Below, piece by piece: positions 53,569 to 63,682 of a DNA stretch of 64,000 nucleotides. The translations under genes and the position numbers were made by a program. Every line of letters starts with the position of its first letter. The stretch's first letter is position 1. The notes below the pieces were generated by a model. That model saw nothing but the letters and a program-made list of their open reading frames with translations. It did no database searches and was not told the origin of the DNA. The stretch is taken from positions 62,001 through 126,000 of the IMG/VR virus record IMGVR_UViG_3300009108_000751; one strand, 5' to 3'.

Positions 53569-55464
53569 ATGGCCGAAAACGATAATTTCTTTAATAGGCT
53601 CACCAGGCTCTTTAGATCTGGCCCACTTGTTAAGAGAAAAGTTAAAGCAGCGAGAGCTCCCAACATGGGAACTCTTCTCCAGCAGTTTCAAAAATCTCAA
53701 AGTCACGTTTACGCAAACGCGATCAGCGCATACGGGATGTACGATCGCATGTCCCGATATGCCGACTTCCAGGAAATGGAAGCAACTCCTGAGATTGCAT
53801 CTGCTCTCGACATCTATGCAGATGAGTCCGTATCACAAGATGAGGTCGGACGCTGCTTGCACATCTATTCAGAGAATGATAAGATTAGAAGGGTTTTAGA
53901 GGAGCTTTTTTATGACAACCTCAACATCGACTTCAATCTTAATCCATGGGCAAGAAATCTTTGTAAGTACGGGGACTTCTTTCTCTTTCTAGACATATCT
54001 CCAGAATACGGTGTCCTGAACGGGATTCCGATCCCTGTTAATGAGATCGAACGCGAAGAAGGCTTTGATCCTGATGATCCGATGGCAGTGCGATTCCGGT
54101 GGGTAACTCAAGGAAATAAGATTCTTGAGAACTGGCAGATCGCCCACTTTAGGCTTTTAGGTAACGATGCATTTCTCCCCTATGGCTCTTCTGTTATCGA
54201 ACCAGCACGAAGGATTTGGCGACAGCTTATCCTCATTGAAGATGCAATGCTTGTTTATCGCGTGATTCGTTCACCGGAACGACGGGTTTTTAAAATCGAT
54301 GTCGGAAACGTTCCACCAGAAGAAGTTCAAAACTACATGCAGCAGGCGAAGTCTGCGCTTAGAAGCTCGCAAGTTGTAGACAAAACTACGGGACGTGTCG
54401 ATCTTCGCTACAACCCGCTTTCAGTTGATGAAGATTATTTCCTTCCCGTCCGCGGCCAAGCAGATGGTACTGCTATCGATACACTTGCAGGCGGGCAGAA
54501 CACCACAGCTATTGAGGATGTTGAGTACATCCAAAAGAAACTTTTTGCGGCACTTAAGGTTCCAAAGGCTTACTTGGGCTACGACGAAATGCTTAGCTCT
54601 AAAGCAACATTGGCCCAAGAAGATATTCGTTTCTCTAGGACGATCAACAAGGTCCAAAGGGTCATGATATCAGAGCTTAACAAGATCGCAGCTGTTCATC
54701 TTTATGCTAACGGCTTTGACGGAGAAGATCTTGTAGACTTCACTCTTAAGCTTTCAAATCCATCAACCATAGCACAACAACAAAAGCTTGAGCTCTTTAG
54801 AACAAAGTTCGAAATCGCCGGCCAATCACCTGAAGGTATGCTTTCTAGAGACTTCTTGAGAAAACGTGTTCTCGGTCTTACAAACGAAGAAATCAAGATG
54901 ATTGAAGAGCAAAAAGAAGAAGATAAGATGCGTGATCTGGAGGTTGAAGCTATTACGCTTCCTGAGACTGAAGGTGAAGCTGCATCCCCTGCAGGCATTG
55001 ACTTAGGCGAGGAAGAACCTGCCCCACCCGAAGAAGAAGATCTTGAGACAGCACAAGAGAAAAAGGGTGATGACTTACTTTTAGGGACTGATGATGTTCC
55101 CCAAGAGGAAGCAGAAGAAAAGCCGGCAAAATCCGAAAAGCCTGTAAAAGCAAGCTCAAATGTAAAGGGGCCCAACAAGCCACGATCAGCTAACAAAGCG
55201 TTTGATGGAAGAGTTTATCAACTGAGGCCGCAAGGTTCCCCGGGATACACAAGCTCTAAGAAAGAAAGATACATTAATAACAGTCTTGGTGACAAGGAAG
55301 CTATTAGCCCAGACTTAAGTGTTAGGTTCGAAAGTCAAGTGAATAGACAAAACCAGATGTCTGCACAGCTCAAACAGACTTTAAAAAGCCTTGAGAAAAG
55401 CATAGGTAATATAGGAAAGTCCTCTGCTTTGCTCGTTGAGGGAGATAATGATGACGAGACATAA
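53569..55464 (+). CDS. gp20: Portal protein, T4 gp20-like, with acidic C-terminal extension
   Basis: PEIASALDIYADE, LCKYGDFF, EDAMLVYRVIRSPERRVFKIDVGN, EDYFLP, DVEYIQKKLFAALKVPK motifs. Confidence 0.95.
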   Translation: MAENDNFFNRLTRLFRSGPLVKRKVKAARAPNMGTLLQQFQKSQSHVYANAISAYGMYDRMSRYADFQEMEATPEIASALDIYADESVSQDEVGRCLHIYSENDKIRRVLEELFYDNLNIDFNLNPWARNLCKYGDFFLFLDISPEYGVLNGIPIPVNEIEREEGFDPDDPMAVRFRWVTQGNKILENWQIAHFRLLGNDAFLPYGSSVIEPARRIWRQLILIEDAMLVYRVIRSPERRVFKIDVGNVPPEEVQNYMQQAKSALRSSQVVDKTTGRVDLRYNPLSVDEDYFLPVRGQADGTAIDTLAGGQNTTAIEDVEYIQKKLFAALKVPKAYLGYDEMLSSKATLAQEDIRFSRTINKVQRVMISELNKIAAVHLYANGFDGEDLVDFTLKLSNPSTIAQQQKLELFRTKFEIAGQSPEGMLSRDFLRKRVLGLTNEEIKMIEEQKEEDKMRDLEVEAITLPETEGEAASPAGIDLGEEEPAPPEEEDLETAQEKKGDDLLLGTDDVPQEEAEEKPAKSEKPVKASSNVKGPNKPRSANKAFDGRVYQLRPQGSPGYTSSKKERYINNSLGDKEAISPDLSVRFESQVNRQNQMSAQLKQTLKSLEKSIGNIGKSSALLVEGDNDDET

Positions 55465-56284
55465 TAAAAAAAGAAACTCTGGCCTTCTTTACGAGTTTTT
55501 AGTAAGAAAGATTTCTCGATCTTTAGTGGAGGGCGACAATAGTAGCGCCAACATTTCTAAGAATATTCTAAAAAAATATTTTTCTACTGGGACCGAAGTT
55601 CACAAAGAGTACAGGCTTATCAATGCTCTTGTTAATGTTCCCGTAGGAAGTGAGGCTGTTGCACAAGCAGTTTTACAGGAAGCAAGAAATGCATCACGCA
55701 GGTTCGACTCTAAGATGCTGAGGACTGAGAAAGATAATTTGATAAGAGAGATAAATCATGAATTTGGGCCTGAGGCAGTCTATGCTGAATCAGTTCCAGA
55801 CTATAAGTCATATGCTACGGCTTCTACTCTTGTGAAGTACTGGAGAGAAGAAAAGGAACTTGATCTTAGTACAGTCGTTAGATACGAAAAAGTTCTTATC
55901 GAATCTTTGGCACGCCCCCTTGAAGAAAAAATAATAGAGGAAGCAGATCCTCAAGTTGACAATCTCGTAGTCAAAGTTGCGACTGATAAGATGCAAAGAA
56001 AATATGAGACAAGACTGAATAAAACGCAATCAGATCTTATCAATCTTTACGCAGTTGAAAACAAGCACGATGCCACGAGAGAGATGATTGAGGGCATCGT
56101 AGAAAGCACGCTGGCAAATTTAAAAGCTTACGGTGCATCCCAAAATGAAAGTTTTGCAAGCAAGGTTCAAAGCGTATCTGAAAGCATTAGAAGCCTCAAT
56201 ATCGAAGAAGTCAATGATACCCTTATTGCTAAAACCCTGGAGATCGTTGAGCTAAATGAAGAATTACAGGGAGCTATAAAATGA
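55448..56284 (+). CDS. Hypothetical head-module protein (HNKKRN start) between portal and protease
   Basis: GAGGGAG RBS favours ATG 55448; all-helical; position analogous to T4 gp67/68. Confidence 0.6.
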   Translation: MMTRHNKKRNSGLLYEFLVRKISRSLVEGDNSSANISKNILKKYFSTGTEVHKEYRLINALVNVPVGSEAVAQAVLQEARNASRRFDSKMLRTEKDNLIREINHEFGPEAVYAESVPDYKSYATASTLVKYWREEKELDLSTVVRYEKVLIESLARPLEEKIIEEADPQVDNLVVKVATDKMQRKYETRLNKTQSDLINLYAVENKHDATREMIEGIVESTLANLKAYGASQNESFASKVQSVSESIRSLNIEEVNDTLIAKTLEIVELNEELQGAIK

Positions 56285-56904
56285 AATTATTGACCGAGTG
56301 CATGACATTTGAATATGATTCGAATCTTATTAAAGAGCAGGCGCAAACTGAGGATGGTAGATTTCTTATGAAGGGAGTTTTGCAGAAAGCAAATACTCTT
56401 AACCAGAATGGGCGAGTTTATCCCCTTGATATTCTCCGGAGAGAGGTGCAGAACTACCAGCGATTTATCGATGAAGGTAGAGCTCTTGGCGAACTAGATC
56501 ACCCGGATACTTCTGTTGTTGAACTAAAGAATGTTTCTCATGTAATTCGAGAAGCACATATGGATGGCGACATCTGCTACGGAACTCTTGAGGTCCTAGA
56601 TACACCGAACGGGCAAATATTAAAGAGCTTGGTTGAGAGTGGTATCAAGATAGGCATTTCTTCTCGCGGCGTAGGCTCTACGCGAAGCGAAGGCGGCCAC
56701 CAAGTTGTTCAAGATGATTTCCAATTAATTTGCTGGGATATCGTGTCAGAGCCTTCAACACCAGGTGCCTTCGTAATGAAGGAAGGTAGAGACCTAACAC
56801 CGGATGAGATCGCCCAGGTTCAAGCTTATTTTGGTCCAGGAGACAAGATCAACCGGATCATGAATTCAATTTTAGAATGGAATGGAGACGCAAATGCCTC
56901 TTGA
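56281..56904 (+). CDS. gp21: Prohead core protease, T4 gp21-like
   Basis: NQNGRVYP, ALGELDHP (catalytic His), GISSRGVGS (catalytic Ser), WDIVSEPST. Confidence 0.93.
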   Translation: MKLLTECMTFEYDSNLIKEQAQTEDGRFLMKGVLQKANTLNQNGRVYPLDILRREVQNYQRFIDEGRALGELDHPDTSVVELKNVSHVIREAHMDGDICYGTLEVLDTPNGQILKSLVESGIKIGISSRGVGSTRSEGGHQVVQDDFQLICWDIVSEPSTPGAFVMKEGRDLTPDEIAQVQAYFGPGDKINRIMNSILEWNGDANAS

Positions 56905-57349
56905 TTACCCAAACTGGGGCGCAGGTGATGTCCCATCTTACCAACTCTCAGGTGTGCCATTTGTTACATCATCAAATGGTGCTGAAGTGAGCACAACCCC
57001 AGTCAAGGTACAATTACCTGGCGTCTCAAGATTTCTAGTTATTAAAGAAACCGCAGGCCAGGATCTGAGAGTAGGCTTTTCCGTTGCTGGTGTCAACGGC
57101 ACCGGAGGCGTTTCTGGCTCGGTTCCTACGAATCCAGCTGGTGGTGAGTCTGCTGCTGACAGAAGAAACTATTTTGTCGTAGAAGCTAATACTACTTCTC
57201 CCCGACTAGAGATTAGATGCAAGACCCTTTACTTCCGTCGCGACGGTTCCTCCGACGCCGGATTTTCCATCATCGCAGGAATCACACCAATAGGTACCAG
57301 CCAGTTCCCGCCTCTGACAGGATCCAGCGGATATGACGGGATCGGATAA
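56894..57349 (+). CDS. Beta-rich head-associated hypothetical protein
   Basis: GGAG RBS favours ATG 56894; PSYQLSGVPFVTSS start; head module context. Confidence 0.55.
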   Translation: MPLDYPNWGAGDVPSYQLSGVPFVTSSNGAEVSTTPVKVQLPGVSRFLVIKETAGQDLRVGFSVAGVNGTGGVSGSVPTNPAGGESAADRRNYFVVEANTTSPRLEIRCKTLYFRRDGSSDAGFSIIAGITPIGTSQFPPLTGSSGYDGIG

Positions 57350-57765
57350 TGAAATTGACCCGAGCTAAGCTTAAAGATCTTATAAAAGAATGCATTGTTG
57401 AAGTGCTAGCTGAAGGGCTTGGTGGAGCAACCTTGACCGAGGCTTCTGTGAAAGCAAAGCCGGCCAGAAATCATAAGAAAACACACACGCATACTCGGCG
57501 CAAGGCTTTGGATTCTATAAAATTCGACCAGCGAGTAAATGAGGCTGCATCATCAATGACCGCAGATCCCGTAATGCAATCTATCTTTTCAGATACAGCA
57601 AAAACAACCCTTCAAGACCAGCTCCAGCACACGCATAATTCTCCTTCCATCCCCCCGGGCGCTGATGCTGCAACACGTGCTGCAGCCCTTTCCACGCCCG
57701 AGGATCTTTTTGAAGGATCTTCTAATTGGGCTACCCTGGCATTTAATGACGGCATCAACAAATAA
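57349..57765 (+). CDS. Hypothetical protein with MKLTRAKLKDLIKE N-terminal motif, candidate internal head protein
   Basis: Amphipathic N-terminal helix ending EVLAEG, similar to capsid N-terminus TLAEG. Confidence 0.55.
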   Translation: MKLTRAKLKDLIKECIVEVLAEGLGGATLTEASVKAKPARNHKKTHTHTRRKALDSIKFDQRVNEAASSMTADPVMQSIFSDTAKTTLQDQLQHTHNSPSIPPGADAATRAAALSTPEDLFEGSSNWATLAFNDGINK

Positions 57766-57786
57766 TTTCAAGTTTGTTTTGAGAGT

Positions 57787-57803
57787 ATATTTACTACCGT
57801 TAG
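57787..57803 (+). promoter_or_regulatory. Candidate late promoter ATATTTACTACCGTTAG
   Basis: 16/17 identical to 28478-28494. Confidence 0.6.
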
Positions 57804-57812
57804 GAGAATCCT

Positions 57813-58310
57813 ATGGCACGCAATAAATTTTCTCACAATAGCATGGGGAACCTTATAGAGGTTCGAAACCCTTCTAATCCCGGTCTTCCCGGAAATAGAA
57901 ATGACGCTACGCTTAAAGAAGCTTTCGGATCTTCTCCGATCTATTCTCCTGGTGCAGACAATACTGTTAAGAAGCAGTTTGAAAATCTAGTAATGCAAGG
58001 TGTCCTTGTAGGGGAGGGCCGCAAAGGATCTGGTTTTGGATTTTCCATTTTTAATAGAGACTTTGTCGATGCTCCTGAAGTTGAGGGAGTTGAGAAAGAT
58101 AACAGTGGAGCCGCCGTGGCAAGTCCATACGTTCCTAATGTTGCATCACCAAACTCTTCGGGACAAGTTGAAAAAGTTGTTGTTCCAAACCGACCTGCAG
58201 GCGGAGATTTTGTAGGTGACAGCTTAAGAGATCCAAAAAGCACCTCGGCAGATATTTCTAACGTGAAGATAGGTTCTTATGGTCTTGGCGTAAGCTCAAA
58301 CCAGAGTTAA
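57813..58310 (+). CDS. Hypothetical protein (P/G/N-rich)
   Basis: AGGAG RBS at 57802; head module context. Confidence 0.6.
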   Translation: MARNKFSHNSMGNLIEVRNPSNPGLPGNRNDATLKEAFGSSPIYSPGADNTVKKQFENLVMQGVLVGEGRKGSGFGFSIFNRDFVDAPEVEGVEKDNSGAAVASPYVPNVASPNSSGQVEKVVVPNRPAGGDFVGDSLRDPKSTSADISNVKIGSYGLGVSSNQS

Positions 58311-58319
58311 TATTTTTTA

Positions 58320-58883
58320 ATGTCAGCACTTTATGAAGCATACGTAAGCTTTCCGCGCTATGACGCACGAAGCGGGCTTGGTTATGGTGCTGCAGATTCT
58401 GCTGTAAAACCAGGCCTATCAGTCGGAAAACCGATGTCAATGCCTGGGCTCTATCCCTACAAAGAGCCTCCCACAGACGTCGATGACGACGGAGAAGACC
58501 TTCCCGCCAAGGACAAAAAGAAGGTAATTAATAAAGTGGGTGGCATTACTCGTATTAACGATCCTTTTTCTAGTAACTGGGTAGATAGAGGCGCTTTTGT
58601 TAACTGGGCAACTCGCCTTGATTTATACGAAGCAAGAAACGCAGTAGACTTAGAGGACGTTGTAAGAGGACTCGAGGGAAGTAGTTCAACAGGTGGCATG
58701 AGTCAATTTGTTGCTATGGGAAATGGGGCGGGAATTTATAAGACCCGGTATGGAAAAACAATAGGAATGGATATAGGCGGCAGGCCACAATCATATTCTG
58801 CGACAAAGACAACAAAGAAGATACCTCCATCTTTATCAGACTTTATCAAAGACTATCTAAGGGATGAAGATGAAGAGATCTAA
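58320..58883 (+). CDS. Hypothetical protein
   Basis: Fills gap between 165-aa ORF and bS21. Confidence 0.6.
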   Translation: MSALYEAYVSFPRYDARSGLGYGAADSAVKPGLSVGKPMSMPGLYPYKEPPTDVDDDGEDLPAKDKKKVINKVGGITRINDPFSSNWVDRGAFVNWATRLDLYEARNAVDLEDVVRGLEGSSSTGGMSQFVAMGNGAGIYKTRYGKTIGMDIGGRPQSYSATKTTKKIPPSLSDFIKDYLRDEDEEI

Positions 58884-59097
58884 GAAGTTTCCCGCAGAAT
58901 ATGGTGTCGTTGTAAGGTCTAGACCAAGAGAAAGTACCGACAAATTAATTGCCCGTTTTAAGAGGATGTATAAGCGCTCTGGGTTACAAACTGAAGTAAG
59001 AGAAACGTATATGCAGCGCTTTATGTCAAGATCAGAGAAAAAGAGAATGAAAAAAAATAGAGCAAAGAGAAGGGCTCTGAAAAACAGCAAAGGGTGA
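58864..59097 (+). CDS. rpsU: Phage-encoded 30S ribosomal protein bS21
   Basis: VVVRSRPRESTDKLIARFKRMYKRSGLQTEVR...FMSRSEKKRMKKNRAKRR aligns by eye with bacterial S21 ([30 protein letters not shown]...YEKPTTERKRAKASAVKR); start may be 58864 or 58870. Confidence 0.85.
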   Translation: MKMKRSKKFPAEYGVVVRSRPRESTDKLIARFKRMYKRSGLQTEVRETYMQRFMSRSEKKRMKKNRAKRRALKNSKG

Positions 59098-59115
59098 TTT
59101 TTTCTTCGAATAATC

Positions 59116-59124
59116 ATATTTAAC
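59116..59124 (+). promoter_or_regulatory. Candidate late promoter ATATTTAAC
   Basis: Intergenic upstream of scaffold/capsid genes. Confidence 0.6.
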
Positions 59125-59144
59125 AGTGTAGATGGGTGAGGACT

Positions 59145-60566
59145 ATGACCAGTAATCTCTATGAAGAAGCCATTGCAGATGCTCGAAAGTTACGTGAGAT
59201 AGCTGAGCAAAATGCTAAAAATGCGATCATTGAATCGATAACACCAAAAATTCGTGACTTAATAGAATCCCAAATAATTGGGGACGAAGTGGATTTTGAC
59301 GAATCTGATATCATAGAAGAAACAGCTGCTCAGGCTTCTCAAGATGATGATCAAGAATTCGATATGACTCCCGAAGCTGCGCAAGAGCTCAGGACCATGC
59401 TTGAAAACGATTCGCCTGAAGAGCAGGACGCTCCACCCGATCCCAATAGCGAAGAAGCTTCAATAGTTTCTTCTGCCGCTTATATCAAAGAATGCAATGA
59501 GTACATCGAGACAGTCCGCGAAGTACTCGAAAAAGTCAGGGGAACTAACCCGGCTGAACTTAATGAACAGGACTTACAAAAATATTTGGCTCTGGTCGCA
59601 ATATCAGACCGAGCAGTTAATAAATTATCCGAAATGATGGCAACCGCCGAAGGTATGCAAATCTTCGAAGGTGTCATCCAGAACTCTCAAGATCAGATTC
59701 ACAACTTTAAAAAGGAGATAAAAGAAATGAAGAGATCACTAAGGGACCTATTGTCCGAGGAAGTTATAACCATAGAGCTGGATCTCGGTGAGGATGCCGT
59801 AGTGGATTCTGAAGAAATCTCAGTTAAGGTTAAAGAAGAAGAGCCCCCACTTATCGACGCCGAAGCCGGCGAAGACGAAGAAGAGGGCGACGAAGATGTC
59901 GATGTCGAAGAAGTCGATGTCGATGTCGATGTCGATGTCGAAGAAGACAAAGTCAAAGTCGGAGAGCTTGAAGAGATGATCCTTGAGCTTGAAGAGGAAG
60001 AGGAAGAGGAAGAAGACATGGAAGAAGATGACATGATGGAAGGCCTCGACGACGACACTGTTCTTGAAATTGACGAAAACATGCTGCGCGAGGAGCTCGC
60101 TAAGATTATGCAAGAAAGCGAAGAGTCCGCAGAAGAAGTTATTGAAGAAGCCTCGGAAGAGGAAGAAGTATTAGAAGAAACGGCCGAGTCAGTCGCCACC
60201 GAGCAAAATGACGAACTCCAAGCCGAGATAGAGAGCTATCAGAGCGCAGTTGCTGACCTCCAGTCACAACTCGCCGAGATGAGCTTGTTTAACGCGAAGC
60301 TGCTCTACACCAATAAGCTGCTAATGAATAGCGATCTCAGCCAGACCCAACGGGCACAGGCCATAGAAACGCTCGATGACGCCGCAAGCTTGCGAGAGGT
60401 GAAGCTTCTATTTAAGACTCTTACAGAGTCATTTAGTAAGCGCGCAGAGGATAAAACATCTTCTCGCAATATCGGCGGCGCAAGTCGTCCAACCAAGTCT
60501 GCATCAATGAACTTGAATGAGTCCACCGAGGCTAATCGATGGGCATTGCTGGCAGGCATAAAGTAA
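59145..60566 (+). CDS. Prohead core scaffold protein, T4 gp22-like, very acidic (ATG 59145)
   Basis: NLYEEAIADARKLREIAEQNAKNAII start, long acidic linker, coiled-coil SLFNAKLLYTNKL; immediately upstream of capsid gene; GAGG RBS at 59138. Confidence 0.8.
   Translation: MTSNLYEEAIADARKLREIAEQNAKNAIIESITPKIRDLIESQIIGDEVDFDESDIIEETAAQASQDDDQEFDMTPEAAQELRTMLENDSPEEQDAPPDPNSEEASIVSSAAYIKECNEYIETVREVLEKVRGTNPAELNEQDLQKYLALVAISDRAVNKLSEMMATAEGMQIFEGVIQNSQDQIHNFKKEIKEMKRSLRDLLSEEVITIELDLGEDAVVDSEEISVKVKEEEPPLIDAEAGEDEEEGDEDVDVEEVDVDVDVDVEEDKVKVGELEEMILELEEEEEEEEDMEEDDMMEGLDDDTVLEIDENMLREELAKIMQESEESAEEVIEEASEEEEVLEETAESVATEQNDELQAEIESYQSAVADLQSQLAEMSLFNAKLLYTNKLLMNSDLSQTQRAQAIETLDDAASLREVKLLFKTLTESFSKRAEDKTSSRNIGGASRPTKSASMNLNESTEANRWALLAGIK
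59895..59939 (+). repeat. In-frame GATGTC microsatellite (Asp-Val)n
   Basis: GATGTC x2 (59895-59906) and x4 (59916-59939). Confidence 0.9.
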
Positions 60567-60597
60567 AGAAAACTTTAAAATCTAAGGGAGATTTATA

Positions 60598-62514
60598 ATG
60601 TCTAAGTTTTCACTCGAAACGCTAGCCGAAGGAATTCGGTCGCGTCACATGGGTGAGGAGAACTCCCGCTTGGTCGAAAAGTGGTCTCGCACCGGTCTGC
60701 TCCGCGGCCTGGAATCAACAAAGCGCGAAAACATGGCGCGCCTTCTTGAGAACCAGACTGCAGAGCTTCTTCGTGAGCAAAGCACAATCGGCACAGGCGG
60801 CGGAGCTGGCACCGCTTCTGGTGACCTTCGCGGTTTCTCCAATATCGCCTTTCCAATCGTTCGTCGTGTATTCGGCGGACTTGTCGCAAATGAGCTGGTA
60901 TCCATCCAGCCCATGAGCTTGCCTTCTGGCCTGCTCTTTTATCTTGACTACACCTACGGTTCTAACGTTGGTGGTGACGCATCTCTCACAACGGGCGATG
61001 CAGGAACCTACGACAAAGAAACGTATCAGCGTGGTCAATCCATCTATAACAACCCAACTGGCAAGGGCGTACGCTCTGGTTCATTGGCAACAGGCGGTCA
61101 GTATGACTTGGTCGGTGCAACTTACTCTAAGGTGCACAGCTCCTCGATCTCACCAACCGTTATGTTTGCTGGTGCACACGGTGCAAACTCATCCTTGACA
61201 TCCGGTTCGTTGTGCCATGCCACAGGTTCAGATGCTAAGTTGCTCCAATTCGATCCTCAAGTTCTTGACTTGATCGAAAACGATCCCGGTCTTGACGGTG
61301 ATGGACGCTTCTGCATCGTCATTGTGGACGTCACTGATGCACCCTTTAACAATGTCGATCTTACGAACGCCAAGGACATTTCCTTGTTCTCAGCAGTTCC
61401 TGAGGTTCGTACAGGTGTTAAAGAGCTTGGTGCTAGCTTCCAGGGCGGCAAAGGTATTCTTAACCTCCGTCGCTTGAACCAGCTTGGTACGTTTGCGAAC
61501 AACAAGTTTACCGCAGATCCCATGGTAACAAGAAGCACATCAAATGCTGCTCTCTTGACAGTTATGTCTGGTAACTTCAGCGGTAAAATTGATGCCGGTG
61601 ATGCTGCTACAGCATACCTCTCAGCATCATATGCCATTGGCCCAACATTGAATGTAGAAGACGGTTCTGGTTCTACCCTTACCATTCCTTCATTCGAATC
61701 TGATTTCGGTACTACACCTTCACCAGTGATCCCTGAAATCGACATTAAGGTTGAGTCCATCGCAGTTACAGCTGCTACACGCAAGCTGAGAGCTCGTTGG
61801 TCGCCAGAATTGGCACAGGACCTTAACGCATACCACAGCCTTGACGCTGAGGTTGAGTTGACACAGATCCTTTCTGAGCAAGTTGCTCTTGAAATCGATC
61901 GTGAAATCCTGAATGACCTGCTTAGCGAAGCCCAGGGCGCAAACCTTTACTGGTCACGTGCTCCAGGCAAGTTCCTGAACAAGGAAACAGGCGCCGAAGT
62001 TAAGTTGAATGACAGCTTATCTGCAGGTCCTCGTTTCACAGGCACAGTTCGCGAATGGTACGAGACCCTGGTCGAGTCCGTTATCGATGTTGCTAACACC
62101 ATCCACCGCAAGACACTCCGTGGTTCCGCGAACTTCGTGGTCACCTCTCCGGATGTCTGCACAATGTTCGAAGCTTCAGTGATGTATCGCCCAAGCCTCA
62201 GCATTGACAGCGAAGGTCAGGTTTCCTCCCCATTCAGCCTCGGTGCTGAAAAGGTTGGTACCTTGAGCAACCGCTTTACGGTCTACAAGGACCCATACTT
62301 CCCTCGCAACAAGATTCTTGTTGGTTATAAGGGTGGTAGCTACCTTGAGACAGGATACGTTTATGCTCCGTATGTTCCGCTGATCGTCACACCAACGATC
62401 TTCGCGCCAGAAGACTTCACCCCTCGTAAGGGCGTGATGACTCGCTACGGCAAGAAGATGGTTCGCGCTGACTTCTACGGTACCGTTACGGTTGCTGACT
62501 TGAACGTCATCTAA
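60598..62514 (+). CDS. gp23: Major capsid protein, T4 gp23-like, with ~250-aa insertion
   Basis: LLENQ, AFPIVRRVF, VSIQPMSLPSGLLFYLDY, IPEIDIK, TRKLRARWSPELAQDL, EIDREIL, YAPYVPL, GVMTRYG motifs. Confidence 0.96.
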   Translation: MSKFSLETLAEGIRSRHMGEENSRLVEKWSRTGLLRGLESTKRENMARLLENQTAELLREQSTIGTGGGAGTASGDLRGFSNIAFPIVRRVFGGLVANELVSIQPMSLPSGLLFYLDYTYGSNVGGDASLTTGDAGTYDKETYQRGQSIYNNPTGKGVRSGSLATGGQYDLVGATYSKVHSSSISPTVMFAGAHGANSSLTSGSLCHATGSDAKLLQFDPQVLDLIENDPGLDGDGRFCIVIVDVTDAPFNNVDLTNAKDISLFSAVPEVRTGVKELGASFQGGKGILNLRRLNQLGTFANNKFTADPMVTRSTSNAALLTVMSGNFSGKIDAGDAATAYLSASYAIGPTLNVEDGSGSTLTIPSFESDFGTTPSPVIPEIDIKVESIAVTAATRKLRARWSPELAQDLNAYHSLDAEVELTQILSEQVALEIDREILNDLLSEAQGANLYWSRAPGKFLNKETGAEVKLNDSLSAGPRFTGTVREWYETLVESVIDVANTIHRKTLRGSANFVVTSPDVCTMFEASVMYRPSLSIDSEGQVSSPFSLGAEKVGTLSNRFTVYKDPYFPRNKILVGYKGGSYLETGYVYAPYVPLIVTPTIFAPEDFTPRKGVMTRYGKKMVRADFYGTVTVADLNVI

Positions 62515-62523
62515 GCGACAATA

Positions 62524-62572
62524 GAAACTTCGGTTTCATGAAGGGGAGTCCGAAAGGGCTCCCCTTTTTTTT
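62524..62572 (+). terminator. UUCG mini-hairpin plus GAAA-tetraloop intrinsic terminator
   Basis: GAAAC-TTCG-GTTTC (62524-62537); GGGGAGTCC-GAAA-GGGCTCCCC (62543-62564) followed by T8. Confidence 0.92.
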
Positions 62573-62606
62573 GTCTCTTTATTTCCTTAAGATTCCAGCA
62601 CGGGAA

Positions 62607-62705
62607 CATATCTAATAGTAGGCCCGTCACATTGCATAAGGGTGAACTCGCCACCGTGCCGGAATCATGCGAACAAAATAAAGGAGAAAATTATGCCAAA
62701 GGTTA
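62607..62705 (+). repeat. 99-bp perfect direct repeat, copy 1 (promoter-like motif + leader + RBS + first codons)
   Basis: CATATCTAATAGTAGGCCCG...AAAGGAGAAAATTATGCCAAAGGTTA identical to 63150-63248. Confidence 0.97.
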
Positions 62706-63061
62706 TTATTTCTGATGATAAAGGTCTGAACCAAACCGCAGGTTCGGGGCTGGAGTCTAGGAGCGCTCACTATAGTAGCTACGGGACTACTACAGCTTTA
62801 GCAACAGGTTCTTTCCCGCTTCTTCCTGCGGGAATAGTAAACACTGTTGACAGCACTAACAACGCACATGGTGTTAGATTGCCCAACGCTGCAGGAGCAG
62901 GTCAGATCATGATCGTTAGAAATGTAGACAGTGCTCAGGACTGCGTTATTAGAAATCAAGCTGAGACAGGTGCCATCCTTGTCACGCTCGGCGAAGGTAA
63001 GACTGCTCTTTTCGTAAGTACAGCTTCTGGAAATAACTGGTCTGGAAGTCAGCTCGACTAA
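62693..63061 (+). CDS. Small beta-rich virion protein, candidate capsid decoration/head fibre (true start ATG 62693)
   Basis: AAGGAG RBS; MPKVIISDDKGLNQTAGSG paralogous with the next gene; VRLPNAAGAGQIMIVRN. Confidence 0.55.
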   Translation: MPKVIISDDKGLNQTAGSGLESRSAHYSSYGTTTALATGSFPLLPAGIVNTVDSTNNAHGVRLPNAAGAGQIMIVRNVDSAQDCVIRNQAETGAILVTLGEGKTALFVSTASGNNWSGSQLD

Positions 63062-63089
63062 AAGAAAACTCAAAAGTGTTATTGCAATC

Positions 63090-63115
63090 AAGGTGCTCAA
63101 TCGAGCACCTTTTTT
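63090..63115 (+). terminator. Intrinsic terminator
   Basis: AGGTGCTC-AATC-GAGCACCT followed by TTTTT. Confidence 0.85.
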
Positions 63116-63149
63116 GTTTGAATATTTTCTTCTTTTTTAAGATCTTCCC

Positions 63150-63248
63150 CATATCTAATAGTAGGCCCGTCACATTGCATAAGGGTGAACTCGCCACCGT
63201 GCCGGAATCATGCGAACAAAATAAAGGAGAAAATTATGCCAAAGGTTA
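63150..63248 (+). repeat. 99-bp perfect direct repeat, copy 2
   Basis: Identical to 62607-62705; period 543 bp. Confidence 0.97.
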
Positions 63249-63682
63249 CGTATTCAGATTCGAAGGGGCTCGTCCAGACGTCAGGTGCTGGGATGGCTCT
63301 AACCGGCTTCATGCATGGTCAAAAATGCCCACAGAAGTCGGTAACAAGCACAGACACGCTTACTGTTGAAGACAGTGGCAAGTTAATTACCCTGACGGGA
63401 TCAGCATTTACTTTGTCGCTGCCCAGTGTCTCAGCGGCAAAAGGATGCCACTATACGATCGTTGCTGGTCAAGCTGCGAATTATGTCCTTTCTGAGCTCG
63501 TCGGAACTGACGACAACGTTTTGACGATGGTAAGCGTAAATGCGTCTGCTACTGAAAGAGATCACGCTTTTACCACAGCTACTCTGAGTGGCGGAGCTAT
63601 CGGAGACAGGTTTTACGCCGTCTCTAACGGAACTTGGTGGGTCATCACGGCCTTCGCCAATGCTGCCGTAGCCGCCGCATAA
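63236..63682 (+). CDS. Small beta-rich virion protein, candidate capsid decoration/head fibre (true start ATG 63236)
   Basis: MPKVTYSDSKGLVQTSGAG; TLTVEDSGKLITL...LSLPSVSAAKGCHYTIV. Confidence 0.55.
   Translation: MPKVTYSDSKGLVQTSGAGMALTGFMHGQKCPQKSVTSTDTLTVEDSGKLITLTGSAFTLSLPSVSAAKGCHYTIVAGQAANYVLSELVGTDDNVLTMVSVNASATERDHAFTTATLSGGAIGDRFYAVSNGTWWVITAFANAAVAAA

What the first reader, a model, noticed from the sequence alone, without database searches (positions are those of the whole stretch)
58864..59097. Phage-encoded ribosomal protein bS21 inside the capsid module
Seen: a bS21-like ORF with an N-terminal extension (MKMKRSKKFPAEYG), a ~3-residue insertion after EVR and a short C-terminus, overlapping the upstream gene and directly before the scaffold/capsid promoter. 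Established: bS21 genes near head genes and expressed late are reported in large freshwater phages (Chen et al. 2022); bS21 shapes anti-SD availability. This is a described phenomenon, but a divergent example.
Basis: partly seen in the sequence, partly recalled or inferred. Interest (0 to 1): 0.6.

Follow-up and report, generated by a model that had tools for sequence, protein, structure and literature searches.

The report
Phage ribosomal protein bS21 gene
A large uncultured T4-like phage carries its own divergent copy of the small ribosomal protein bS21 inside its late head-gene operon; phages are already known to do this, and the copy probably sits on host ribosomes to favour phage protein synthesis.

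Summary
The ORF at 58864-59097 (+) is a real gene under purifying selection (dN/dS 0.10-0.13). It is a true but divergent bS21 homologue. PF01165 matches nearly end to end at 25.5 bits, 1.5 below the curated cutoff. All 15 clade members hit only PF01165. The clade profile matches E. coli bS21 at 95% HHalign probability, and the AlphaFold model's best PDB matches are all bS21 chains. The likely start is the second ATG (58870, 75 aa). The gene lies in a T4-type head module in the order TerL-portal-p282-protease-p155-p138-p165-p187-bS21-scaffold-MCP. That order is strictly conserved wherever enough flanking DNA is held, in more than 20 metagenomic contigs. It overlaps the upstream gene by 14 nt and lies between two candidate late promoters. 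However, this is not one of the Chen et al. 2022 clades. Here bS21 is co-directional with the head genes, GC is 45.7%, there is no C-terminal aromatic residue, and the genes are SD-led (48-81% versus 5% in a Flavobacterium phage control). This points to a host that uses Shine-Dalgarno initiation. Basic N-terminal extensions, head-gene proximity and late expression of phage bS21 are all published. I rate it a new member of a known kind, of modest interest. Ribosome binding is inferred, not shown.

The parts
58864..59097 (+). Phage bS21 homologue. The longest ORF is 77 aa; the probable start is ATG 58870 (75 aa, pI 11.65, 27 K+R). Layout in 75-aa numbering: basic N-terminal extension at residues 1-~12, bS21 core at 15-69, short basic C-terminus.
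   Evidence: PF01165 E 1.1e-5. HHalign against E. coli rpsU gives 95.3% probability, E 2e-8. The AlphaFold2 model has pLDDT 81.5 and its top 8 PDB fold hits are bS21 chains. dN/dS is 0.10-0.13. pI.
58859..58863 (+). SD-like AAGGG, 6 nt upstream of ATG 58870.
   Evidence: Sequence. The genome-wide SD position profile peaks at -12 to -8.
58320..58883 (+). p187, an ORFan head-module protein. Its stop overlaps the bS21 start by 14 nt, so translational coupling is likely.
   Evidence: It has no Pfam, PHROG or Atlas hit.
57813..58310 (+). p165, an ORFan and the first gene of the inferred p165-p187-bS21 late transcription unit.
57786..57793 (+). Candidate late promoter TATATTTA, 19 nt upstream of the p165 start.
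   Evidence: The motif has 19 of 20 sites on the + strand and 13 of 20 in the 5.5% of the genome that is non-coding, P 2e-12. It is conserved, with small variants (ATACTTA), in the nearer relatives only; in the distant loci the corresponding region differs.
59116..59139 (+). Conserved intergenic block of 24 nt. It holds the candidate late promoter (CATATTTA at 59115-59122) followed by a short leader ending in a GGGTGA Shine-Dalgarno for the scaffold gene.
   Evidence: The block is nearly invariant in 12 of 15 loci whose bS21 coding DNA has diverged to about 54% identity.
59145..60566 (+). Very acidic scaffold (gp22-like) protein: 473 aa from ATG 59145, pI 4.05, 136 D+E.
   Evidence: Its position between the protease and the MCP matches T4-type modules.
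60598..62514 (+). Major capsid protein, gp23 family.
   Evidence: PF07068 E 6.5e-75 and phrog_138.
62540..62575 (+). Strong intrinsic terminator (12-bp stem plus a T-run), the first one downstream of bS21.
56281..56904 (+). Prohead core protease, gp21 / S77 family.
   Evidence: PF03420 E 6.4e-25 and phrog_207 E 1.3e-52.

Best explanation
This is a phage-borne, divergent homologue of bacterial small-subunit ribosomal protein bS21. It is fixed in the late head-morphogenesis operon of an uncultured clade of large T4-like myoviruses.

Shown: it is a conserved protein-coding gene under purifying selection. It is homologous to bS21 over the whole domain. It always sits between p187 and the scaffold gene on the same strand as the head genes.

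Inferred: it is transcribed late from a (C/T)ATATTTA promoter upstream of p165. It is translated by coupling to p187, and there is no terminator before the end of the MCP gene. The protein then occupies the bS21 site on the platform of host 30S subunits, next to the 3' tail of 16S rRNA. Its lysine/arginine-rich N-terminal extension adds RNA contacts. The effect would be to favour SD-dependent initiation on phage late mRNAs when scaffold and capsid proteins are needed in bulk.

The phage's own genes are overwhelmingly SD-led and the protein lacks the aromatic residue that clamps the anti-SD in Bacteroidia. I therefore expect it to promote or retune SD:anti-SD pairing rather than block it.
For: Homology: PF01165 covers 2-54 of 55 positions at E 1.1e-5. 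All 15 clade members hit only PF01165, best E 4.2e-15. HHalign of the clade profile against E. coli rpsU gives 95.3%, E 2e-8. Twenty of 21 PDB sequence hits are bS21. The AlphaFold2 model has pLDDT 81.5, and its top 8 Foldseek PDB hits are ribosome-bound bS21 chains with target-normalised TM 0.53-0.73. The best BFVD hits are annotated phage RpsU.

Real gene: dN/dS is 0.10-0.13.

Fixed late-module position: gene order is identical in every locus that holds enough flanking DNA, with MCP identity 74-100%.

Late signals: motif statistics, the conserved block, and the only strong terminator after the MCP.

SD-using system: 48% of crude gene calls and 71-81% of independent gene calls carry an SD 4-mer. 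Coding controls give 9% and a Flavobacterium phage gives 5%. There are 24 GTGTAA-N17-TATAAT early promoters.

Constraint mirrors cellular bS21: the columns that stay invariant or nearly so across the clade are the canonical ones, namely E, RFKR, G, E-x-R and SEKKR.

Precedent: pelagiphage bS21 enters E. coli 70S ribosomes (PMC6375957). Phage S21 N-terminal basic extensions have been predicted to aid ribosome binding or preferential initiation (PMC7162821). Phage bS21 is co-expressed with head genes (PMC9723584).
Against: The window's own sequence falls below the curated cutoffs of PF01165 (25.5 versus 27) and TIGR00030 (21.6 versus 28.95). The canonical K-P-S turn is replaced by S-R/K-S and there is a 2-residue insertion, so the binding geometry could differ. 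The host, and hence its 16S 3' tail and its own bS21, is unknown. SD strength does not differ detectably between early and late genes, so there is no obvious mRNA feature on which selectivity for late messages could act. Placement among prohead-core genes is equally what a packaged protein would show.
Confidence: 0.6

Rival explanations
1. Virion cargo. The bS21 homologue is made with the prohead core proteins, packaged in the head, and injected with the DNA. It would then modify host ribosomes from the first minutes of the next infection, or simply act as a basic DNA-condensing internal protein.
For: It lies among small lineage-specific genes between the prohead protease and the scaffold gene, the region that holds prohead core proteins in T4-type modules. 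It is translationally coupled to an ORFan head-module protein. It is extremely basic, pI 11.65, next to a scaffold of pI 4.05. Chen et al. raise encapsidation as a possibility (PMC9723584).
Against: No structural match to any head or internal protein was found; the best viral structure hits are RpsU. The conserved positions are the canonical bS21 ones. The P-x-E-(Y/F)-G motif that might mark protease processing is not conserved in the more distant clade members. No virion proteome is available.
Confidence: 0.15
2. Selective inhibitor. The protein binds host 30S subunits but acts mainly to shut down host translation, as a poisoned bS21, rather than to stimulate phage translation.
For: E. coli ribosomes carrying pelagiphage bS21 retained only about 5% of in vitro translation activity (PMC6375957). 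The divergent turn and the insertion could alter the mRNA exit and anti-SD region.
Against: The gene appears to be expressed with late genes, when host shut-off should already be complete and maximal translation capacity is needed. The phage's own mRNAs use the same SD mechanism as a generic host. The Mizuno result came from a heterologous ribosome.
Confidence: 0.12
3. Off-ribosome exaptation. A bS21-derived RNA-binding protein acts on phage mRNA, for example on the conserved scaffold leader, or in another ribonucleoprotein, not on the ribosome.
For: Cellular bS21 can take part in a non-ribosomal RNP, the OLE RNA complex (PMC12054373, abstract). The 24-nt block immediately downstream of the gene is more conserved than the coding DNA. 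The sequence is divergent enough to fall under the curated cutoffs.
Against: The conserved block is adequately explained as promoter plus SD. The predicted fold matches the ribosome-bound conformation. No Rfam family or structured RNA was found in 55000-63500.
Confidence: 0.08
4. Chance ORF or mis-annotation: a basic low-complexity frame overlapping real genes.
For: The ORF is small and K/R-rich, individual HMM scores are below threshold, and there is an 86-aa ORF on the opposite strand.
Against: dN/dS is 0.10-0.13 in this frame. The gene is conserved in more than 20 contigs with variable DNA. The domain-length match is to one family only.
Confidence: 0.01

Closest known systems
bS21 of the Bacteroidetes-infecting freshwater phage clades a-e (Chen et al. 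2022, PMC9723584)
   Same: Large myoviruses (293-331 kb there; here 236 kb at about 70% completeness). bS21 lies within a few genes of TerL, portal, prohead protease and MCP. Expression is late: measured there, inferred here. The proposed role is substitution into host ribosomes.
   Different: [quoted passage not shown] GC is 31-34%, the sequences are close to Flavobacteriia bS21, and an aromatic Tyr54-equivalent is always present. Here the gene is co-directional and overlaps its upstream neighbour. GC is 45.7%, there is no aromatic residue after F51, the genes are SD-led, and no tblastn match exists to any deposited phage.
bS21 of uncultured huge phage LR756508.1 (484 kb; Al-Shayeb et al. 2020 data set)
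   Same: Its MCP is the closest in the deposited-phage collection (50% identity). Its bS21 occupies the same slot, on the same strand, immediately upstream of the scaffold and MCP genes.
   Different: It scores 40.4 bits on PF01165, above the cutoff. It has no N-terminal extension, a long C-tail with W and YYY, no SD upstream, and no overlap with a neighbour. It shares only 34% identity over 47 residues with the window protein, and p187 is absent. This reflects either an old shared acquisition with fast divergence or two captures into the same variable slot.
Pelagibacter phage HTVC008M bS21 (Mizuno et al. 2019, PMC6375957)
   Same: A T4-like marine myovirus bS21. Viral ribosomal-protein genes are under purifying selection (mean pN/pS 0.10 there; dN/dS 0.10-0.13 here).
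   Different: The HTVC008M protein is 54% identical to its host's bS21 and was clearly captured from it. It is experimentally incorporated into 70S ribosomes. The window protein has no close cellular relative and is untested.
Cellular bS21 (E. coli rpsU; Francisella bS21 paralogues as specialised-ribosome precedent)
   Same: Same domain, motifs and predicted three-helix fold. Francisella shows that alternative bS21 copies can change which mRNAs are translated (PMC9578407 and PMC13374519, abstracts).
   Different: About 27-36% identity to E. coli. It has an 11-residue basic N-terminal extension, a 2-residue insertion after EVRE, K-P-S/T replaced by S-R/K-S, and a C-terminus about 11 residues shorter. 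It is encoded by a virus inside a head operon.

Membership tests
Ribosomal protein bS21 (PF01165 / TIGR00030) | Score at or above the curated family cutoff | tested here: inconclusive
   The window protein scores 25.5 bits against a cutoff of 27 (PF01165) and 21.6 against 28.95 (TIGR00030). The match is near full length (2-54 of 55). All 15 clade members hit PF01165 and nothing else, with best E 4.2e-15.
Ribosomal protein bS21 (PF01165 / TIGR00030) | Profile-level homology to an experimentally established bS21 | tested here: met
   HHalign of clade alignment A2 against E. coli rpsU gives probability 95.3%, E 2e-8, over 55 aligned columns. Twenty of 21 PDB sequence hits are bS21.
Ribosomal protein bS21 (PF01165 / TIGR00030) | Canonical motifs (E...L-R-R-F-K-R, G, E-x-R, aromatic, S-E-K-K/R-R) and a small, very basic protein | tested here: met
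   These columns are invariant or nearly invariant across the clade. The protein is 75 aa with pI 11.65. One deviation: the Pro of K-P-S is replaced.
Ribosomal protein bS21 (PF01165 / TIGR00030) | Open three-helix fold as seen on the 30S subunit | tested here: met
   The AlphaFold2 model has pLDDT 81.5 with helices at 23-37, 39-51 and 54-74. The top 8 Foldseek PDB hits are bS21 chains, with target-normalised TM 0.53-0.73 and rmsd 2.2-3.7 A. E-values are only 0.19-1.2 because the protein is short.
Ribosomal protein bS21 (PF01165 / TIGR00030) | Physical incorporation into the 30S subunit | not testable with these tools
   This needs ribosome purification with mass spectrometry or cryo-EM. The only precedent is for another phage's bS21 (PMC6375957).
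Chen et al. 2022 bS21-phage clades a-e | bS21 on the reverse strand relative to conserved head genes | tested here: not met
   The gene is on the same strand in the window and in every related locus.
Chen et al. 2022 bS21-phage clades a-e | Aromatic residue at the F. johnsoniae Tyr54-equivalent position in the C-terminal helix | tested here: not met
   No aromatic residue follows F51 in the 75-aa protein, so none can occupy that position under any alignment. Some distant clade members end in Y or H.
Chen et al. 2022 bS21-phage clades a-e | Bacteroidetes-type genome: 31-34% GC and SD-poor genes | tested here: not met
   GC is 45.7%. An SD 4-mer lies upstream of 48-81% of genes, against 5% in Flavobacterium phage immuto.
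T4-type head morphogenesis module | Prohead protease (S77), scaffold and gp23-family MCP in order, with TerL and a gp20-type portal upstream | tested here: met
   PF03420 and PF07068 match in the window, as do phrog_207 and phrog_138. PF03237 (terminase) and PF07230 (portal) match the 96-100% identical neighbours in L002 and L014.

The most novel reading that the evidence does not exclude
In this clade bS21 has become a dedicated late translation factor for an SD-using host. It would be produced by coupling within the head operon. Through its basic N-terminal extension and altered turn, it would retune the 16S 3' tail so that ribosomes prefer the clade-invariant short GGGTGA leader of the scaffold-MCP message. 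That leader pairs with the UCACC part of the anti-SD rather than the usual CCUCC. Alternatively, the protein is packaged and delivered with the DNA. Either would be a mechanistically new use of a ribosomal protein by a virus.
Probability: 0.12. Interest if true: 0.65.

Novelty: new member of a known kind. Interest (0 to 1): 0.3.

Why it matters
Phage-encoded bS21 is one of the few cases where a virus supplies a structural part of the ribosome, and how it biases translation is still untested. Published work concentrates on Bacteroidetes phages, whose hosts hide the anti-SD, and on a pelagiphage. This clade offers a contrasting natural experiment. It has a strongly diverged bS21 with a basic N-terminal extension, in a phage whose genes are plainly SD-led. 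The gene is hard-wired into the late head operon and conserved across many metagenomic contigs. If a host can be found, it would allow a direct test of whether phage bS21 stimulates, retunes or blocks SD:anti-SD pairing. As an observation it extends a known phenomenon rather than opening a new one.

Tried and rejected
- tblastn of the protein against 50,697 deposited phage records: no match at E 0.01.
- Bacterial and archaeal species genomes: the pattern scan with the clade alignment matched 75 stretches but none was confirmed. Only one narrow pattern was used, so this is weak evidence of absence.
- Host or donor lineage through the phage tmRNA tag (degenerate pattern): 0 hits.
- T4 late promoter TATAAATA: 0 sites in the window. 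It is replaced here by (C/T)ATATTTA.
- Generic sigma-70 and terminator scan around the gene: promoter-like sites were no more frequent than in shuffles, and there is no terminator after bS21.
- Idea that early and late genes differ in SD strength, which would give the late bS21 something to discriminate: no robust regional difference. Dropped.
- Other ribosome-associated genes (S1, bL12, peptide deformylase, HPF): none in the 236 kb held.
- Operon partners p187 and p165: no Pfam, PHROG or Atlas lead.
- Sample identifiers in the literature: none found, so the environment is not established.
- A second protein search with the canonical-like P0016 returned only 5 sequences.
- P0014 from the exhaustive search is a 247-aa repeat protein and was discarded as spurious.

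Full report
THE OBSERVATION. The window holds a 77-codon ORF at 58864-59097 on the + strand. Its product matches Pfam PF01165 (Ribosomal_S21) over profile positions 2-54 of 55 with E 1.1e-5 and 25.5 bits, 1.5 bits under the curated cutoff of 27. It matches TIGR00030 at 21.6 bits against a cutoff of 28.95, and the PHROG family annotated 'ribosomal protein S21' at E 1e-3. A sequence search of the PDB returned 21 distinct sequences. Twenty are bS21 chains from ribosome structures, each weak on its own (E 0.008-0.35) but in full agreement.

HOMOLOGY IS SECURE AT THE CLADE LEVEL. The large protein collection holds seven close relatives at 79-100% identity (alignment A1). An exhaustive profile search of 1.84 billion representatives found only nine sequences at E 1e-3 or better, and one of them is a spurious repeat protein. 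This is therefore a small, divergent sub-family. All 15 members of the widened alignment A2 hit PF01165 and no other family, with best E 4.2e-15. The A2 profile aligns to E. coli rpsU with 95.3% HHalign probability, E 2e-8. An AlphaFold2 model built on A2 has mean pLDDT 81.5 and three helices. Its eight best Foldseek matches in the PDB are all bS21 chains in solved ribosomes, with target-normalised TM 0.53-0.73 and rmsd 2.2-3.7 A. Its best matches among predicted viral structures are annotated phage RpsU proteins. The columns that stay invariant or nearly so across the clade are the canonical bS21 ones: E, R-F-K-R, G, E-x-R, an aromatic residue, and S-E-K-K-R.

THE GENE IS REAL. Against relatives at 72-94% nucleotide identity, dN/dS in this frame is 0.105-0.128. 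That equals the mean pN/pS of 0.10 reported for viral ribosomal-protein genes (PMC6375957).

- Start codon. The second ATG (58870) is the likelier start. AAGGG at 58859-58863 lies 6 nt before it, SD motifs in this genome peak at -12 to -8, and the nearest homologues begin MKRSKK.
- N-terminal extension. Measured against E. coli rpsU and other canonical-like sequences, it is about 11 residues.
- Insertion. The insertion after EVRE is 2 residues, not about 3.
- Turn. The K-P-S/T turn is replaced by S-R/K-S.
- C-terminus. It is about 11 residues shorter than in E. coli.
- Overlap. The overlap with the upstream gene p187 (58320-58883) is 14 nt. An overlap of 14-29 nt is kept in relatives, which suggests translational coupling.

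GENOMIC SETTING. The window is bases 62001-126000 of a 235,681-base IMG/VR viral contig with a CheckV completeness estimate of 70%. The contig has 45.7% GC, and 235 of 258 crude gene calls are on one strand. Around the gene lies a T4-type head module. It contains the prohead protease (PF03420), a very acidic scaffold protein (pI 4.05) and a gp23-family major capsid protein (PF07068, E 6.5e-75), with TerL and a gp20-type portal upstream. The order TerL-portal-p282-protease-p155-p138-p165-p187-bS21-scaffold-MCP, all on one strand, holds in every one of more than 20 related contigs that carries enough flanking DNA. This covers MCP identities of 74-100% and bS21 identities of 47-100%. The gene is thus a vertically inherited, fixed part of this clade's head module.

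REGULATORY SIGNALS. These are inferred from sequence, not measured.
- The T4 late promoter TATAAATA is absent from the window.
- A related octamer, (C/T)ATATTTA, occurs 20 times in the genome. Nineteen copies are on the coding strand and 13 lie in the 5.5% of the genome that is non-coding (binomial P 2e-12). Typical placement is 13-60 nt upstream of structural-gene starts.
- One copy at 57786 precedes p165. Another at 59115 lies between bS21 and the scaffold gene.
- The second copy sits in a 24-nt block, 59116-59139, made up of the motif, a short leader and a GGGTGA SD. This block is nearly invariant in 12 of 15 loci although the adjacent bS21 coding DNA has diverged to about 54% identity.
- The first strong intrinsic terminator downstream is after the MCP gene, at 62540-62567.
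- My reading is as follows. p165-p187-bS21 is a late unit that reads through into scaffold-MCP, which has its own stronger late promoter.

WHAT KIND OF HOST. AGGA, GGAG and GAGG peak 8-12 nt upstream of starts. They occur before 48% of crude gene calls against 9% of coding controls. They occur before 71-81% of independently called genes in three related loci. In the annotated Flavobacterium phage immuto locus, run as a control, the figure is 1 of 21. The left arm of the genome has 24 GTGTAA-N17-TATAAT elements on the + strand against 1 on the - strand, 19 of them within the first 18 kb. That is a sigma-70-type early promoter class with a canonical -10 box. From general knowledge, Bacteroidia neither use SD sequences (PMC9976891 and PMC7797042, abstracts) nor use TATAAT -10 boxes. 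This clade's hosts are therefore most likely not Bacteroidia. I could not identify the host.

COMPARISON WITH WHAT IS KNOWN. Each general feature here is already published.
- Phage bS21 and its incorporation into 70S ribosomes: Mizuno 2019.
- Basic N-terminal extensions on huge-phage S21, predicted to aid competitive binding or preferential initiation, and phage tmRNAs: Al-Shayeb 2020.
- Proximity to protease and MCP genes in 388 of 900 bS21 phages, with hosts in several phyla, late co-expression, and the idea of encapsidation: Chen 2022.

This phage is nevertheless not one of Chen's clades. There, bS21 is on the opposite strand, GC is 31-34%, hosts are Bacteroidetes, and an aromatic Tyr54-equivalent that stacks on A1534 of the anti-SD is always present. 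Here the gene is co-directional and overlapping, GC is 45.7%, genes are SD-led, and no aromatic residue follows F51.

The closest deposited MCP belongs to the 484-kb uncultured phage LR756508.1 (50% identity). That phage also has a bS21 in the same slot and on the same strand, immediately before the scaffold and MCP genes. However, that protein scores 40.4 bits on PF01165. It has no N-terminal extension, an aromatic C-tail and no SD, and it shares only 34% identity over 47 residues with the window protein. Flavobacterium phage immuto, with 45% MCP identity, has no bS21 at all. The region between protease and scaffold is therefore a variable slot that holds a bS21 in at least two lineages. Either bS21 was captured once and diverged fast, or it was captured twice. 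The data do not decide between these.

MECHANISM. The best-supported explanation is that the protein binds the bS21 site of host 30S subunits late in infection and favours SD-led initiation on phage messages. The basic extension would add RNA contacts.
- Shown: homology, fold prediction, purifying selection, fixed position, and the SD-led character of the genome.
- Inferred: late transcription, translational coupling, ribosome binding, and the direction of the effect.
- Rivals: packaging into the head as cargo; selective inhibition of translation; and an off-ribosome RNA-binding role.
- I found no early-versus-late difference in SD strength that would give the protein an obvious handle on selectivity.
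- The scaffold leader's GGGTGA SD is atypical for this genome and deeply conserved. It is the one feature that could support a more specific model.

VERDICT. This is a new, divergent member of a known kind. Its modest added interest comes from its SD-using context and its operon-embedded, translationally coupled arrangement.

Noticed in passing
Outside the window, same contig: G000:C1:34087-34408 (+), equal to L035:1088-1409: The phage encodes a full-length one-piece tmRNA (RF00023, 137.8 bits, E 3.6e-55) with tag peptide ANDDFDIYAIAA. A degenerate scan for this tag in 185,579 species genomes found nothing. With bS21 it is a second translation-related gene. tmRNAs in huge phages are already reported (PMC7162821).
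   Followed up: partly
Outside the window: G000:C1:860-17687 (+), plus 5 scattered sites: An early promoter class, GTGTAA-N17-TATAAT, has 24 copies on the + strand against 1 on the - strand, and 19 lie in the first 18 kb. The -10 box is canonical sigma-70; the GTGTAA element at -35 is unusual and may be phage-specific.
   Followed up: partly
Window 5651, 53518, 57786 and 59115 (intergenic); 619, 14446, 28672 and 31221 (inside ORFs): The candidate late-promoter octamer (C/T)ATATTTA replaces T4's TATAAATA, which is absent from the window. Genome-wide, 19 of 20 copies are on the coding strand and 13 of 20 are in non-coding DNA. No late sigma factor (gp55-like) was searched for.
   Followed up: partly
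Window 62600-62641 and 63143-63184: Two consecutive intergenic regions end in the same stretch of about 40 nt, which begins with a CATATCTAATA element and runs up to the start codon. Each follows a hairpin and T-run terminator and precedes a small GTG-initiated ORF (62642 and 63185). This looks like a duplicated promoter/leader cassette.
   Followed up: no
Window 60598-62514: The major capsid protein is 638 aa, but the gp23 Pfam and PHROG matches and all tblastn hits cover only about 60% of it, in two pieces. The first roughly 360 residues appear to carry an extra or very divergent domain relative to T4 gp23.
   Followed up: no
Window 59145-60566: The scaffold protein is extremely acidic (136 D+E of 473 residues, pI 4.05) with V-D/E repeat runs. 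It lies directly after the extremely basic bS21 (pI 11.65). Whether this charge complementarity matters is unknown.
   Followed up: no
Window 56882-58883: Four small ORFs (p155, p138, p165, p187) lie between the protease and bS21. They are conserved across the clade but have no Pfam, PHROG or Atlas relatives. They are absent from Flavobacterium phage immuto and LR756508.1. They are probably clade-specific prohead core or internal proteins.
   Followed up: partly
Window 55124-55150 (+): A weak, sub-threshold Rfam match to DUF805b RNA (21.7 bits against a gathering score of 35.6, E 0.016). It is most likely chance.
   Followed up: no
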